Shown: positions 43,994 through 51,128 of the stretch, in pieces
Position numbering within the stretch: position 1 is the first letter of the stretch
Layout of the letters: every line of letters begins with the position of its first letter
Source: Vitrella brassicaformis CCMP3155
Lineage: Eukaryota > Protista > Chromerida
Length of the DNA stretch: 64,000 nucleotides
Direction of reading: 5' to 3'
Assembly: GCA_001179505.1 (NCBI GenBank)
Contig: CDMY01000471.1
Location: forward strand, 6,057-70,056
Position numbers and translations under genes: made by a program
Notes under the pieces: generated by a model
What the model saw: the letters and a program-made list of their open reading frames with translations, nothing else
Told to the model about the DNA's origin: nothing
The model's database searches: none

Positions 43994-46900
43994 TCAACCG
44001 CCGTCTGTCTCAGGCAGGAAGGGCTCGTTGATCCACCGGCGCAAGTTGGGCAGCGTGTCAGCATGCGTCCCTTCGTGGCCACAATACGCACACCGAAACT
44101 TCGGCAGCTCCTCTCTCGATCCAGCCGCCTGGCGGTCCTTCGCTTGCTGCAGCTGCTGGGCGAAGTGGGCCTGCCACTTGGTATAGCACGGCTGGCAGAG
44201 GCAGAGGTGACGACACGGAACGAACATGACGACTGGGGGAGCGCTGAGACACGTCACACACTCGCGTTGCTGGGCAGTGGACGGCTGGGTGGCAGCGCTT
44301 GATGATGAAGCCGCTTGCTGCATGGTCAGCTCAGCCAGCCTGAGACATCAGCAGAAGGCCGACAGAGACATGGAACCGGCCTGCCTCACCTGCCTGCCTG
44401 CAATGGTTTTACTTTTTCTGGGCCTCTTCAAGCTGTCTTTTCAGCTCGTCCTCTCGCTCTTCCTTCCTCCTTGTCTCTTCCTTCGCCTCCTCCAGTCGCT
44501 GGCGCAGCTGATCCATCATACCTTCAGCCTCACTGGCAGAGACAGACCTATGAATGATGGAACGAGACAAGGCATCTTCACATGCCGATGGTCAAGGCAC
44601 ACAGTTCTCCGCCCCTTACCGGACGGCACGAGCACTGGCATCGGGTCTCTGGACCTGTCTCTCTCCGTGCCGAGATCCTGGCGCCGTGAGAGCACTTGCG
44701 GCGTCGTTCGGCTGGGGGGCGAGGGGAAACGGGGGAGGGGGCGGCAGAGGCTGGCAATCACCACTACTTCTGCGACCATACACGCGACAGAGACCGACTT
44801 GGCCTATCCCTCTTCGCTCTGAAGCTGGTACCTGTCAGTTTGGCCACGTACGCGGTCTTCGCGTACTCGTGGGGGGCGCGGAGGGGGAGGATAGGCCGGC
44901 CGTGGCGGCAAAGACGGGAGACTGATGATGAAACAGGAGATAACACAGTGAGATGAATCGGATTCGTTGCGATCCACTCCGACTTACGGCATTCGCTTTT
45001 CTGATTCTGGGAGGGCCTCCATCTGTTGTTTATGTTGGCGGTCTCTCTTTCTTCGGCTGACCACTGGCACGAAACTTTCGTCGCCATCACTCTCCCCGTC
45101 AACGGGCGGCGGAGACACGACACCTGCAGCATCAGTCGGCGGTGCCGAGGGGCCGCTGAAGACACAAAGACATGCAAGTGGGGAGACACGCATGCGAGGG
45201 GCCGCCGTCCAAATCTGTGTTTACGGGTGGAGGTCGGCAGATGACAATGAGGACGACGGCTGGTCATTCGTGTCTCTATCGATGGCACCGGACGCCACAC
45301 TGAACACGCACACACACGCATAGAGAGAGAAAGACAAGACAACACTGCTTACCTGCTGTCAGCCTCTGTCGATGGCAACGGCCACTGCTGTCGCGTTCCC
45401 TTCTTGCCGCCCATTTTGCCTTTCTTCTTTGCCTTCTCTCGCTTCTCATCGGCTATCAGCTCCTCAGCTATTCGAGCAGCCACGGCATCATCTTCCTGCT
45501 GCTGGGGCGTTGTCCCGGTACTTCCCTGCATGTCCTGCTGAATATCTTGCACGAGTTTGCATGCATAACGCTCGCCGGGCGTGGTCTTGTGCATCAGCTG
45601 AGTGTCGGCCCCGTGCTCGAGTAGTGTCCTGATCACCTGCTTGCAAGTGTCGATCTGTTCTGGTGGGGCTTTGTCTCTGAGCCGGTGACTGAGGCGCAAG
45701 CCAGCTTCCATCAGCGGCCGAAGGCCTAGCAGATTTGGCTTCTTGTTGATTTCTGCCGCACCGACATTCTTGCAGAGCCACTCGGCTACATGAAGCTGAC
45801 CCTTTACCATGGCCAAGTCGAGCGGCGTCTTCCCTCCAGAGCTCCTCGCACTGGGAGACGCCCCATGCTTCATTAGCAGATCCAAATAGCTGCAGACGAA
45901 GTCTGATGACAGCCGGGTAGAGAGTGCAGCGGCCACATGTATTGGAGTATTGCCTTTGCTGTCCTCCTCAACGGCGAGAGATGGGTCATGCTCCAGCAGC
46001 TGGTGATATACCTCCAGCTGGTCGGTCTCATACTGACGGCTCGGTTGAGTTGCTGGGACCGACAGAACGGGGAAGGCGAGGCACAGTCCATGCGTCGCCG
46101 CTCCATTCTTCAGAAGCACTTCGACAGAGATCGAGTCGGCACATCGGACGGCCGTAAGAATAGGCGGTGTGTCGAATACAGTACAGCGGCGGTCGGTGCC
46201 CACTTCCGCGGACACGAGAGCCCCAAGAACGGCGGCGTGCAGCTTGCGGCATGGCCACTTCGGCAAAGCGAGCTCTCTTCCATCGCCAAAATTCCACGGA
46301 CTCCAAGAGCAGTCGATCGCTAAGTACAGCAGTCCGAGAGGAATCACGGGAGAGTCTTCGTTGACAATGTCGCGTAAAGGAACGGCCATCGTGACGTCAG
46401 CTCCCGCTTCCACAAGACGCTTCACCTCATCAGCCGCACTACAAGCGGTACATTGCCAGAAAACTGACCCAGGGGGGTGGGAAACTGTGTTCTCTGCGGA
46501 AAACCGGGGCCCCATGCGGAAAACTGAGCCGGGGGCCCGGAAAACTGGTGATCTGCAGTGGAAAACTGACCACCTGCGTGGAAAACTGGTCTTCTGCCGC
46601 CTGTACCCAGTTTTCCATTGCCTGATGCCAGTTTTCCACTGTCTCTACCCAGTTTTCCAGTCTCTCTACCCAGTTTTCCATTGCCTGATGTCAGTTTTCC
46701 AATAAATGTGCCAGTTTTCCAATAGATATGCCAGTTTTCCAATGAATGTGCCAGTTTTCCAGTAGATACACTCGAGATCTAACGCAGCACGCACCAGTCA
46801 ATGCTTTCTGAAGTCAGTGAGAGAGTTGGAGAGAGCGCGGGCGTGCAGCAGGAGGGAGAGAGACACAGGGCAAGGATGGCCGGCCGGCCGTCAATAAAAG

Positions 46901-47520
46901 ACGGTGTCCGCTCGATGCACCCATCCACTCACTCAGTCATCGATCATCAGTACCTGTCATCATCATCCTCGCCCTTTCCGTGCACCTCCAACAGAGGGCA
47001 GAGAGCGACCGCACCTCGGAAAACTGGCAGATTCATCGGAATCATCGGAAAACTGGCACATTCATTGGAAAACTGGCACATTCATTGGAAAACTGGCACA
47101 TTCATTGGAAAACTGGTGGGTAGAGACAGTGGAAAACTGGTATCAGGCAATGGAAAACTGGGTACAGGCGGCAGAAAACCAGTTTTCCACGTGGGAGTGC
47201 CAGTTTTTTACTGCAGATCACCAGTTTTCCACGCAGGTGGTCAGTTTTCCACTGCAGATCACCAGTTTTCCGGGCCCCCGGCTCAGTTTTCCGCATGGGG
47301 CCCCGGTTTTCCGCAGAGAACACAGTTTCCCACCCCCCTGGGTCAGTTTTCTGGCAATGTACCGCTTGTAGTGCGACGAAATTCTACGGCACACAATCCC
47401 ACAGGCGAGCTCTAGACTCGCCACATGATTGTTGCCCTTCCGTAGGACGATAGCCGCAAGCTCGAAGCCTTGGCTGCGCAGAAGATCATCTAGTTGACTC
47501 TCGTAGGAGGGCTCCTCCAT
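43994..47520 (-). CDS. Ankyrin-repeat / coiled-coil / C-terminal RING-HC (C3HC4_3-like) putative E3 ligase, interrupted by a CACTA element
   Basis: Ankyrin repeats (GNTPIHVAA, GKTPLDLA, LRPLMEA); RING CVTC..VPCRHLCLCQPC..CAYC. The N-terminus MEEPSYESQ..CRRISS joins ADEVKRLVEAGADV when the insertion is removed. Confidence 0.85.
46437..47373. mobile_element. Non-autonomous CACTA (EnSpm/CMC)-type DNA transposon with long foldback arms, 937 bp
   Basis: Ends CACTACAAG...CTTGTAGTG with CG on both flanks (2-bp TSD). 46437-46590 is a perfect inverted repeat of 47220-47373; imperfect arms extend to about 330-360 bp with many GGAAAACTGG subterminal repeats; no transposase ORF. Confidence 0.92.
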
Positions 47521-47732
47521 CTGAATGTTTCGAACACTGGCAGACAGTACAGCACACACACGTCAGGGGGACCAGATCTCAGGCAAAGCGAGACCCTTTG
47601 TGCCATCACCTGTTCCTTGTGTTGGTTGGTTGGTTGGTTATTGCGTGTGTGCGCTGACAGCGAAGGGGAACTTGAAGCCTGACAGATGAAAGTGGCCCCC
47701 ACTTCGAGCTCGCAATCGTCCAGGCAGGGGAA

Positions 47733-48437
47733 ATGGAGAGCGGCGACTTCGGACGCTCCTTCGAGGAGTCTATAGAGCGGTTTGCGACCTACGAGGACTA
47801 TCTGGACGCTCAAATCACCGACACAGACCGGTTCTATCTCGAGGACGATGAGTTGGCCCGCCAGCTGGTGGAGATCGGATGCCGCAAGGGGGAAGTGCTC
47901 AGCAGGGAGGAGTTCGCCGCCAGGAGGGAGGCGGCCGAGCAGTCCAAGCGGGCCAAGCTCCAGAACGCCCCGAAGGTGCTCGCGAGTGCGGGGCGGGACC
48001 TCTCGCAGTACCCCTTTCTCCGCCACTTGGCCGCGAGGGAGGAGCTGGTCCGCAACGGTCGGCTGTCGACCATTATTTTCATCCGCGACCGCAACCAGAA
48101 GGGGCAGGAGATCAGCGGCTACGTTGACTACGGCTTCCGTCTCAAAACCGAGAACTTCGAGCCGTACTTCGACAGGAAGAGGCGGCTGCTGCCACGGCCC
48201 ACCGATCTGTCTTTCTTCAACTGGGACACGCACCACAGCACGGCCAACGACTCGCCAAACTTCCAGATCATCCCTGACCACGATCTGGGGCTGCTGTTCA
48301 AGAACAAGAGGGACAGGAAGGTCATCAATGTCGACCCCAATGCGGAGCCGGGCGACAACTCGAGAAGGCATGAGCTGAAGACGCATGAGTATCTGCAGGT
48401 GGTCATCTACGACCATATGACCAGAAAGAAGGCGTAG
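47733..48437 (+). CDS. CFAP299: Cilia- and flagella-associated protein 299 (C4orf22/DUF4464), intronless CDS
   Basis: FATYEDYLDAQIT..DRFYLEDDELARQLVE, LAAREE..IIFIRD..GQEISGYVDY, LLPRPTDLSFFNW, LLFKNKRDRKVINVDP, YDHMTRKK. Confidence 0.93.
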   Translation: MESGDFGRSFEESIERFATYEDYLDAQITDTDRFYLEDDELARQLVEIGCRKGEVLSREEFAARREAAEQSKRAKLQNAPKVLASAGRDLSQYPFLRHLAAREELVRNGRLSTIIFIRDRNQKGQEISGYVDYGFRLKTENFEPYFDRKRRLLPRPTDLSFFNWDTHHSTANDSPNFQIIPDHDLGLLFKNKRDRKVINVDPNAEPGDNSRRHELKTHEYLQVVIYDHMTRKKA

Positions 48438-49247: not shown

Positions 49248-51128
49248 TCATGCAGCAGCGGCGGTGGCTGTCTGAGCGGCCTGCTGCTTCTCCTTGGTGC
49301 CGCGCGCGATGATGTTGCGTGCCCGCGTGCCGCCCACCACTCGCTGCATCGACTGGTACCTGCAACACACACAGCAAATACGCAGACACGTTGGTTGATG
49401 GCTGGTGTGTTGGTTGGTGTGTTGGTCGCTGACCATGGTCCGATCTTTGAGTTCTGGAAGACGTCCTGCTCGCATCTGAACCCCTCAATGCTCTTCAGAA
49501 TGCTGTGGGTCGACAGGCAAACGATACACCACACCCACATGCAGCGTCTCTTTTGCACCCCCCCAGCCAGCGCACCTACCCGAAAATGTTGAAGTCAGCT
49601 TCGTTGGGCGTCTCGCCGCCCAGGAAGGTGCGCCTGCCGACGGCCTCAACAAACTCGTTCAACGCACCGTAGAGGGCCTCACGCTCATTGTCCACCTGCA
49701 GAAAGGCAGCGTGTCATGGGTGTGTTGGTGTGTGTGTTGCGGTATGTGAGAGTGTGTGTGTGACGTGCCTTGTATTTCTTCTTTCGCGACTTTGAGACGA
49801 GCCACATGACAAGAGTGCCGGAGAGGTGGGCGCCCCACTTCTCGAAGAAGGAGAAGGACGGGTGCGTCAACAGGTAGTCAAACGTCTCGGCGGACTCCTG
49901 CAGGTCAGGTAGGTGCACACACAGGGACATCGGATGAATGCCATAGTGGATGCATGTGGGTGTTATCTCTCTCTGTGTGTGTGTCTGTGTGTGTGTACCT
50001 TGAGGGAGCGGTAGATGTTCATCACAATCAGCTGAACCAACACGTCGTCAGACCTGCACACACACACAGACACACACGTCCCTCCCTCTCTCCCTCTCTC
50101 CCTCCCCCCCGTCCCTCTCTCATCCCATTCCAGCTGACCACTTGATCCACTTCTTCTCCTCTTCCTTGGCAGCCTCGCTCTCCTTCTGGCCTGCCTTCCC
50201 ACTGCCACCACCACCACCACCCCTGAGCCCCCCCTTGCTCTCGCGCCGCCTGGCCTCGTGTGCGACCAGGTTGTGCACGATGCGCTTGCTGTCCTTCAGG
50301 ACGATGGCAGAGGGGTCGTCGGGCGAGGAGGGCGGGACGGGTGAGCTGGCTGACGGGGGTGTGTTGGGGCGGATGACGAGGATGGGCACCTTCTTGTAGT
50401 CGGGGCTCCAGGAGGAGATCTCCTTCTTGGCCAAGGGATGCACCTCCACCACCTGTGTGTGGCGATACATATGGGGGAATGAATCGATGGATTGGATGGT
50501 GTGTAGGGTAGGGTGGTGTGTGGTAGTGCTCTCACGTTGTAGGGGATGTTGTGGTAGTCCAGTGCGATGCGCACTTTGCGGCAGAACGGACAGCTCCTGT
50601 CAACACACACACACACACACAGACAGACAGACATGGAGATGCCCAGACAGATCCCTCTCTCTCTCCGTTGGCTGACTGACTGACTGACTCGAATTGGTAA
50701 ATGGTGACATCGCTGTCCTGCAGCGACACGTCCGCGGCAATGAGGTCGTCCTCCTTCAGGAACTTGTCCACATCCACACCACCGCCAGGCACACTGATGC
50801 TCGCGCCACCTCCTGCTGCACCACTGCCACCAGCACTCTCAGCACAATGCGCCACGCCATAGTGCGGCCGCTTCGACGACGAAAAGGCGCCATAGCCGAG
50901 CAGCAGAGACCCGCCAATAACAGCGGCAGCAGCTTTGGCTGCATTAGACTGGTGATGGGATGGGCTGCCCTGTGTCGGCGTGTGCGGCGGCGCTTGTCTG
51001 AGGGAGAGGGTGATGTTTGCAGCGGCAGCTTGGGCAGCGGCGGGGAGCGGTGGCGATGATGCGTGAGGGGACGCTGCAGCAGCCAGGGAGCGCCGCAGCG
51101 AGGAGGCCAAAACGCGGATGTCCCTCAT
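49248..51128 (-). CDS. PTGES2: Prostaglandin E synthase 2-like glutaredoxin/GST protein with transit-peptide-like N-terminus, multi-exon
   Basis: TIYQFE|SCPFCRKVRIALDYHNIPY|VVEVHP..KEISWSPDYKKVPIL..LKDSKRI; W|SDDVLVQLIVMNIYRS; FLGGETPNEADFNIFG. Confidence 0.9.

What the first reader, a model, noticed from the sequence alone, without database searches (positions are those of the whole stretch)
46435..47375. CACTA foldback transposon with built-in, frame-preserving splice sites (introner-like)
Seen: removing the element plus one CG TSD copy restores an open frame in the ankyrin-RING gene (RRISS-ADEVK). Each terminus reads CACTACAAGCG|GTACAT inward and TTGTAG|TG outward, so there is a GT donor 11 nt in and an AG acceptor 2 nt from the far end. 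Splicing 47362 to 46439 on the minus strand (924 nt) leaves 11+2+2 = 15 nt, giving RRISS-HYKRA-ADEVK in frame. The retained 13-mer has no stop in any frame (unless the TSD starts with A), and the symmetric TIRs make this orientation-independent. The rest of the host gene looks intact. Established: maize dSpm elements can be spliced out, and introners in Micromonas and Aureococcus are DNA transposons that create introns. Inference: a self-masking CACTA family that may be generating introns in this intron-rich lineage.
Basis: partly seen in the sequence, partly recalled or inferred. Interest (0 to 1): 0.88.

Follow-up and report, generated by a model that had tools for sequence, protein, structure and literature searches.

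The report
Young CACTA transposon retained in mRNA
A recently inserted 937-bp non-autonomous CACTA-type transposon splits the first coding exon of an ankyrin-RING gene of the alga Vitrella brassicaformis. Its ends contain plausible splice signals, but the public RNA assemblies I could reach show it retained in the transcript, so it looks like an ordinary gene-disrupting insertion, not an intron-maker.

Summary
Window 46437-47373 is a 937-bp foldback element. It has CACTACAAG termini, arms whose first 154 nt are 100% identical, 19 GGAAAACTGG subterminal repeats and CG/CG flanks. Removing it plus one CG restores a continuous frame, and the proposed GT/AG pair would leave 15 nt in frame.

The introner reading is not supported. 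RNA assemblies from coded runs X4 and X1, and a JGI transcript contig, remove the seven true 53-73-nt introns of this gene. They nevertheless read from both exons 25-111 nt into the element, past the proposed donor and acceptor. No contig joins the exons, spliced or empty-site.

- The public gene model starts 48 nt downstream of the element.
- The transcript would fold into a roughly 330-bp duplex that buries both sites.
- A frame-preserving GT/AG pair arises by chance in 22-42% of random CACTA ends.
- A published screen scored Vitrella introner-free.
- Class II transposons total only 0.17 Mb in this genome.

The best reading is a young CACTA/Mirage/Chapaev-type (CMC) non-autonomous insertion. 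Splice sites in CACTA termini were described for maize En/Spm in 1990. The scan raised the same idea on other DNA of this genome (s1-248664, s1-197145), and those follow-ups also found no splicing. A minor spliced isoform cannot be excluded from contigs.

The parts
46437..47373 (.). Non-autonomous CACTA/CMC-type foldback transposon, 937 bp, with no coding capacity for a transposase
   Evidence: Termini CACTACAAGCGGTACAT at both ends. Nested inverted repeats. ORFs within it have no homologs.
46435..46436 (.). Left CG flank, one copy of the putative 2-bp target-site duplication
   Evidence: Read directly from the sequence. CG is a palindrome, so on this copy alone it cannot be told apart from an extension of the inverted repeat.
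47374..47375 (.). Right CG flank, the second copy of the putative 2-bp target-site duplication
   Evidence: Flanks of other copies read CG, CT/AG and CA next to the terminus, which fits a 2-bp duplication that varies between copies.
46437..46590 (+). Left terminal arm, 100% identical to the reverse complement of 47220-47373
   Evidence: Global alignment of the two arms.
47220..47373 (-). Right terminal arm, 100% identical to the left arm
46459..46760 (.). Left subterminal repeat field. The GAAAACTG motif recurs at 20-21-nt spacing, 5 copies in forward and then 8 in reverse orientation.
47019..47352 (.). Right subterminal repeat field, the mirror image of the left one, differing by insertions or deletions of repeat units
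46771..47017 (.). Non-repetitive internal segment of the element
   Evidence: It lies between the innermost inverted-repeat arms.
47374..47520 (-). Host coding exon 1 (49 codons starting at the ATG), cut off from the rest of the gene by the insertion and absent from the public gene model
   Evidence: It is open only in the frame that continues into exon 2; the other two frames carry 3 and 5 stops. GC by codon position is .63/.41/.61, against .65/.44/.63 in exon 2. It is transcribed in RNA contigs.
47537..47609 (-). True 73-nt intron in the 5' UTR of the host gene, spliced in RNA
   Evidence: Joint 47536>47610 in X4, X8 and X1. It is also removed in L003.
45353..46436 (-). Host exon 2, which carries the ankyrin repeats. 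The public CDS (P0046) starts at the ATG at 46389-46387.
   Evidence: Pfam ankyrin families. Gene model at L001 2262-4657 and the P0046 sequence. X4 contig 14.
47361..47362 (-). Proposed GT donor, 11 nt inside the element. RNA contigs read through it.
   Evidence: X4 contig 16 reaches 47347 and X1 contig 4 reaches 47344. L003 reads 111 nt into the element.
46439..46440 (-). Proposed AG acceptor, 2 nt from the element end. An RNA contig reads through it.
   Evidence: X4 contig 14, a spliced mRNA of 2232 nt, runs without a break from 45353 to 46463.
43994..44323 (-). Last coding exon of the host gene, with the C3HC4 RING finger
   Evidence: Pfam PF13920, E = 2.9e-9.

Best explanation
This is a young, non-autonomous cut-and-paste transposon of the CACTA/Mirage/Chapaev (CMC) kind in Vitrella brassicaformis CCMP3155. 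A transposase encoded elsewhere presumably recognises the CACTACAAG termini and the arrays of GGAAAACTGG subterminal repeats (inferred). The element integrated with a 2-bp duplication into the first coding exon of an ankyrin-RING gene. It is now co-transcribed with the host gene and stays in the polyadenylated transcript, whereas the gene's seven short true introns are removed.

The retained element ends the original reading frame 51 codons inside itself. It should also fold into a duplex of about 330 bp that buries the splice-like GT and AG (inferred from the predicted fold). The insertion therefore most likely disables or N-terminally truncates the protein. The splice-like motifs are a by-product of the CACTA terminus and are not a working self-removal device at this locus.
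For: Anatomy of the element.

Genome identity: NCBI GCA_001179505.1, contig CDMY01000471.1, with P0046 named as a Vitrella brassicaformis CCMP3155 protein.

Recent insertion into coding sequence:
- The empty site restores one open frame.
- Exon 1 shows the same GC pattern by codon position as exon 2, and the other two frames are closed.
- The arms are 100% identical over 154 nt.

Retention in RNA:
- X4 contig 14 has six introns removed and continues to 46463.
- X4 contig 16 and X1 contig 4 have the 5' UTR intron removed and continue to 47347 and 47344.
- No joint across the element appears in X4, X8, X1 or the DNA-like X3.
- The JGI transcript contig L003 has the 5' UTR intron removed and then reads 111 nt into the element.

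Other support:
- The public model, built with stranded RNA-seq intron hints, starts at 46389 and has no intron over the element.
- The real introns here are 53-73 nt; the proposed one is 924 nt.
- The predicted RNA fold is -699 kcal/mol, z = -36, with both sites inside the terminal stem.
- Other copies exist and are transcribed. Distinct flanks appear as loose ends at both termini in DNA and RNA runs.
- CACTA elements with CAC..GTG ends and 2-bp duplications are documented (PMC6004678; PMC12730594).
Against: - The RNA evidence comes from assembled contigs, not raw reads. Contigs drop rare variants, so a minor spliced isoform cannot be excluded.
- The Logan contigs reach only 25-30 nt into the element, because 31-mers become repetitive there. 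That is short of the tool's 31-letter bridging rule. Only the JGI contig goes further, and it has 2 mismatches to this copy after about 66 nt, so its distal part may come from another copy.
- By motif alone, the proposed donor (GTACAT) and acceptor (TTGTAG) fall within the range of the real sites of this gene.
- No transposase partner with matching ends was found or tested.
- The 2-bp duplication is a palindrome on this copy.
- Exon 1 has no homologs, so the view that it is coding rests on frame and composition alone.
Confidence: 0.8

Rival explanations
1. Introner-like element. The GT 11 nt inside one terminus and the AG 2 nt from the other are used by the spliceosome, at least at a low level or under some conditions. 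This removes 924 nt, leaves a 5-codon in-frame scar, and lets the host gene tolerate the insertion.
For: The motifs exist, are the same in both orientations and preserve the frame. The donor and acceptor resemble the weaker real sites of the same gene. There is precedent in the title of Menssen et al. [quoted passage not shown] Downstream exons are still expressed at a word depth of about 49 in X4.
Against: - No junction contig appears in three RNA runs or the JGI transcript assembly, while read-through is assembled at both boundaries with no fork at the proposed sites.
- The annotation has no intron there.
- The proposed intron is 12-17 times longer than the gene's real introns.
- Both sites lie in a perfect duplex.
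- The motif combination is expected by chance in 22-42% of CACTA ends.
- Vitrella was scored introner-negative in a published screen.
Confidence: 0.1
2. The 49-codon upstream ORF was never part of the gene. The true start is the annotated Met at 46389, and the element sits harmlessly in the 5' leader.
For: The public model starts at 46389. Exon 1 has no detectable homologs. A 48-codon open frame arises by chance in about 12% of shuffles.
Against: With the element removed, the frame is continuous from the ATG at 47520 through 64 codons to the annotated Met, so scanning ribosomes would have started at 47520. GC by codon position matches exon 2, and the other frames carry 3 and 5 stops. The ATG lies 16 nt after a spliced 5' UTR intron.
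Confidence: 0.07
3. The insertion is an assembly artefact or a chimera and is not present in the organism.
For: None specific. Repeats can mislead assemblers.
Against: Both boundaries are present, with identical sequence, in independent DNA-like contigs (X3, which equals L002 from ERR558149) and in RNA contigs from other studies. No empty-site joint was found in any run.
Confidence: 0.01

Closest known systems
Maize En/Spm defective elements (dSpm) in a2-m1 and bz-m13
   Same: CACTA-type element with subterminal repeat arrays. The first 9 nt of the terminus, CACTACAAG, are as I recall the maize inverted repeat (from memory). The AG two bases from the end belongs to the terminus itself. By its title, Menssen et al. 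1990 showed that En/Spm termini contain splice sites that turn a dSpm in an exon into a novel intron (reference lists).
   Different: Splicing is not seen in RNA assemblies here. The duplication is 2 bp, not the 3 bp of plant elements. The host is an alveolate with ~50-100-nt introns. The arms are far longer and pair almost perfectly.
Introners: transposon families that create spliceosomal introns (Micromonas, Aureococcus, dinoflagellates; Gozashti et al. 2022 and 2025)
   Same: A multi-copy DNA element with inverted repeats and a target duplication, sitting in a coding exon, with GT/AG motifs positioned to leave a frame-neutral scar.
   Different: The defining property, removal from mRNA as an intron, was tested here and not met. 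Vitrella brassicaformis CCMP3155 is scored IE = 0 in Supplementary Table 4 of PMC9860276. At 937 bp the element is much longer than the host's introns.
CMC (CACTA-Mirage-Chapaev) elements with 2-bp duplications, such as ENS1_Cis of Ciona savignyi and the CMC-NA MITEs
   Same: 5'-CAC...GTG-3' termini, a 2-bp target-site duplication and a non-autonomous structure (PMC6004678). The wider CMCT clade makes 2-5-bp duplications (PMC12730594).
   Different: No transposase was linked to this family here. Its very long, repeat-built arms give it a foldback architecture unlike that of a short MITE.
Foldback-type elements, whose long inverted arms are built of short tandem repeats
   Same: Arms of about 330 nt composed of 20-21-nt repeat units around a short unique centre.
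   Different: The termini and the small duplication point to CACTA/CMC. 'Foldback' describes the shape here and does not place the element in a family.

Membership tests
CACTA/CMC superfamily (non-autonomous member) | Termini 5'-CAC(TA)...(TA)GTG-3' within terminal inverted repeats | tested here: met
   CACTACAAGCGGTACAT at both ends. The arms are 100% identical over 154 nt.
CACTA/CMC superfamily (non-autonomous member) | Short target-site duplication of 2-4 bp | tested here: inconclusive
   CG/CG flanks, but CG is a palindrome. Flanks of other copies read CG, CT paired with AG, and CA. This fits a 2-bp duplication, but the two ends of individual copies could not be paired.
CACTA/CMC superfamily (non-autonomous member) | Arrays of short subterminal repeats in both orientations, which serve as transposase-binding sites in En/Spm | tested here: met
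   19 copies of GGAAAACTGG against 0.16 expected, at 20-21-nt spacing in both arms. Binding itself was not tested.
CACTA/CMC superfamily (non-autonomous member) | Mobilised by a DDE transposase of the CMC type carried by an autonomous partner with the same ends | not testable with these tools
   No tool here allows a genome-wide DNA search of Vitrella. An earlier scan note (s1-080122) reports a CMC transposase in this genome, but I did not see its ends.
CACTA/CMC superfamily (non-autonomous member) | Several near-identical copies in the genome | tested here: met
   At least seven distinct flanks adjoin the termini in DNA and RNA contigs. Summed depth over the element is 3-9 times that of the flanks in X3, which is only a rough guide.
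Introner | Copies are removed from mRNA by the spliceosome, so that they are introns | tested here: not met
   RNA contigs read through both proposed sites. No junction contig appears in X4, X8, X1 or L003. The evidence is at contig level, so a rare isoform is not excluded.
Introner | Splice signals supplied by the element and/or its target duplication | tested here: inconclusive
   GT at 11 nt and AG at -2 nt exist, but this is expected by chance in 22-42% of CACTA ends and no use of them was seen.
Introner | Many copies lie inside genes at positions of annotated or RNA-supported introns | not testable with these tools
   Other copies could not be fetched. A published screen of annotated introns scored Vitrella negative. 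Class II elements total 0.169 Mb against 16.41 Mb of introns.

The most novel reading that the evidence does not exclude
The Vitrella CACTA family may be a nascent introner. On this reading, a minority of transcripts, or transcripts under particular conditions, or other copies with shorter arms, are spliced through the GT and AG in the terminal repeats, as reported for maize dSpm. That would give partial rescue of hit genes and a route from a CMC transposon to a new intron in a chromerid.
Probability: 0.08. Interest if true: 0.55.

Novelty: new member of a known kind. Interest (0 to 1): 0.2.

Why it matters
If the element were spliced, it would be a CACTA-derived intron-maker in the closest photosynthetic relatives of apicomplexans, a lineage with about six introns per gene. 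It would also link the 1990 maize observation to the modern introner picture. The evidence here points the other way.

What remains is a clean example of a very recent and probably still mobile class II transposon in a genome that is otherwise almost free of transposons. It also shows that splice-like motifs in CACTA ends are expected by chance, so they should not be read as adaptation without junction reads. The locus may be useful for marking active transposition in Vitrella and for correcting one gene model.

Tried and rejected
- **Spliced or empty-site junction in JGI metagenome contigs**: no match, but the result is uninformative. The collection did not return the Vitrella transcript contig L003 when I scanned for its own 17-mer. 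All 58 hits of that scan were chance matches; none extend to a 21-mer.
- **Terminus scans of viral and prokaryotic genome collections**: nothing found, as expected.
- **Homologs of the host protein, to find an uninterrupted ortholog**: swamped by generic ankyrin proteins, with no close relative.
- **Search with the region around the junction**: only the public 666-aa model came back. Full-length spliced or empty-site products would be 730-735 aa, beyond that search's length limit, so their absence means little.
- **Element ORF as a handle on other copies**: no hits.
- **Exon-1 peptide against 1.84 billion representative proteins**: two weak hits. These are chance matches inflated by internal repeats of unrelated proteins.
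This gives no support for or against.
- **Look-up of earlier scan findings by sequence**: blank. The operators state that such a blank means nothing.
- **The Menssen 1990 paper itself**: not held, so I could not read it.
Full report
**What is there**

Window 46437-47373 is a 937-bp element. Both of its ends read CACTACAAGCGGTACAT, and these are the only two matches in the 64-kb window, against 0.06 expected by chance. Its arms are inverted repeats: 46435-46597 against 47213-47375 at 99% complementarity, followed by nested arms out to about 330 nt. A global alignment shows that the first 154 nt of the two arms are identical. Further in, the arms differ only by insertions or deletions of whole repeat units and a few substitutions.

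The arms are built from a GGAAAACTGG motif spaced 20-21 nt apart. It occurs 19 times, all inside the element, against 0.16 expected. About 250 nt of unique sequence lie in the middle. The element is flanked by CG on both sides. No ORF in it resembles any known protein, so it is non-autonomous.

**The host**

The DNA is contig CDMY01000471.1 of NCBI assembly GCA_001179505.1. The gene's public protein (P0046, 666 aa) is labelled Vitrella brassicaformis CCMP3155. The interrupted gene lies on the minus strand and encodes ankyrin repeats and a C-terminal C3HC4 RING finger.

- Deleting the element plus one CG joins a 49-codon exon 1 (ATG at 47520) to exon 2 in one open frame (...RRISS-ADEVK...).
- The proposed GT (47362-47361) to AG (46440-46439) splice would leave 15 nt in frame.
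- With the element retained, the frame stops 51 codons inside it.

Exon 1 looks coding. It is open only in the frame that continues into exon 2; the other frames have 3 and 5 stops. Its GC content by codon position (.63/.41/.61) mirrors that of exon 2 (.65/.44/.63). The insertion therefore hit coding sequence. The intact exon 1 and the identical arms indicate that it is recent.

**The splicing test**

Three behave as RNA: X4, X8 and X1. Their contigs skip seven CT..AC intervals, which are minus-strand GT..AG introns of 53-73 nt. The fourth, X3, keeps the introns and behaves as DNA.
- X4 contig 14 (2232 nt, word depth 48.6) is the host mRNA with six introns removed. It continues without a mismatch from exon 2 to 46463. 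That is 27 nt into the element and 25 nt past the proposed acceptor.
- X4 contig 16 and X1 contig 4 have the 73-nt 5' UTR intron removed. They run from exon 1 to 47347 and 47344, which is 15-18 nt past the proposed donor.

All three contigs stop where 31-mers become wholly repetitive. None stops at the proposed splice sites, which is where a competing spliced path would have forked the assembly graph.

No joint across the element, spliced or empty-site, was reported in any run. An independent transcript assembly gives the same picture. JGI record 3300017297, contig Ga0186270_111571 (L003), has the 5' UTR intron removed and then reads 111 nt into the element.

The public annotation was made with Augustus using stranded RNA-seq as intron evidence (PMC4501334). 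It starts the CDS at 46389, 48 nt downstream of the element, and has no intron over it.

The test has limits.
- These are contigs, which drop rare variants.
- The Logan contigs reach fewer than 31 nt into the element.
- The distal part of L003 has two mismatches to this copy and may derive from another copy.
- A minor spliced isoform therefore stays possible.

**Why splicing would be unlikely here**

The real introns of this gene are 53-73 nt. Genome-wide, introns total 16.41 Mb over roughly six per gene in 22,817 genes (PMC4501334 supplement), so they are short. The proposed intron is 924 nt.

The transcript across the element is predicted to fold at -699 kcal/mol (z = -36 against shuffles). 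Both the proposed donor and the proposed acceptor sit inside the perfectly paired terminal stem. By motif alone the sites (GCG|GTACAT and TTGTAG|TG) fall within the range of the gene's weaker real sites. The obstacle, if there is one, would therefore be length and structure. That step is an inference.

**Is the 'design' more than chance?**

It is not. AG two bases from the end follows from the CACTA terminus itself. In 20,000 simulated termini, a frame-preserving GT within 30 nt occurred in 42%, and one that also left a stop-free scar in 22%.

**The family**

Loose ends at both termini give at least seven different flanks, in the DNA-like run and in the RNA runs. Other copies therefore exist, and some are transcribed with their boundaries intact. 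Read outward from the element, the bases next to the terminus are CG (four flanks, plus this copy's two), CT, AG and CA. CT and AG are what the two sides of a single copy with a CT duplication would show, which fits a variable 2-bp duplication. I could not pair the two ends of any copy.

Several features place the element in the CACTA/Mirage/Chapaev (CMC) group.
- It has CAC...GTG termini.
- It has subterminal repeat arrays.
- Its duplication is 2 bp. Such duplications are documented in this group (PMC6004678; PMC12730594).

I could not fetch other genomic copies or an autonomous partner, because no tool here searches the Vitrella genome by DNA.

Two published numbers limit the family's possible role as an intron source. 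Vitrella brassicaformis CCMP3155 is scored IE = 0 in Supplementary Table 4 of Gozashti et al. 2022 (PMC9860276). All class II elements together make up 0.169 Mb of the 72.7-Mb genome.

**Comparison with what is known**

The idea that CACTA termini carry splice sites is old. Menssen et al. [quoted passage not shown] I saw this title in two reference lists, but the paper itself is not held. Introners are now reported from most orders of transposable elements (PMC12130899). Even if this element were spliced, it would be a new member of a known kind of system. As it stands, it is a new member of a known transposon group.

**Earlier scan notes**

The same stretch was noted as a recent CACTA insertion that splits the gene (s1-197225). 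The same introner idea was raised for other elements of this genome (s1-248664, s1-197145), and the follow-up agents likewise saw no splicing. These are unchecked AI notes and I do not count them as independent evidence.

**Verdict**

- The transposon identification is supported.
- The self-splicing, introner interpretation is not supported at this locus.
- The element is a young CMC-type non-autonomous transposon that is retained in the mRNA of an ankyrin-RING gene and most likely disrupts it. My confidence in this is about 0.8.

Noticed in passing
window 46438-46515 (minus strand) and 47295-47372 (plus strand): Each terminus carries an outward-facing ATG 79 nt from the end, with an open frame (MGPRFSAENT...TACS) that runs out of the element. 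At the left end it is in frame with host exon 2, giving the 388-aa ORF 45349-46515. This may be chance (a 1-in-3 phase match), but it could supply a start codon for a truncated host protein.
   Followed up: partly
window 47610-47733: The host gene's 5' UTR exon and the 5' end of the divergent DUF4464 gene (47733-48437, plus strand; it resembles CFAP299) lie so close that RNA assemblies merge the two transcripts into single contigs. This is a head-to-head gene pair with touching or overlapping leaders.
   Followed up: no
element 46437-47373; coded runs X13-X17: Marine sediment metagenomes from 2023-2025 hold 6-40% of the element's 31-mers. Vitrella or a close relative carrying near-identical copies therefore appears to be present in environmental samples.
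   Followed up: no
window 46722-46763, 46439 and 47371: RNA contigs reveal variant copies elsewhere in the genome. One lacks two 20-nt repeat units (a 40-nt skip at word depth 98 in X4). Another joins its flank as ...CACCCTACAAG in place of CACTACAAG, which is either a variant or a damaged terminus.
   Followed up: no
window 46389 (start of public model P0046): The public gene model begins at an internal Met and omits the 49-codon exon 1 and the first 15 codons of exon 2. The model is probably truncated because of the insertion.
   Followed up: partly
window 47620-47650 and 49380-49440 (minus strand): Runs of CCAA/GGTT-type tetranucleotide repeats (ccaaccaaccaacc) occur in leader and intron-like sequence near both genes.
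   Followed up: no
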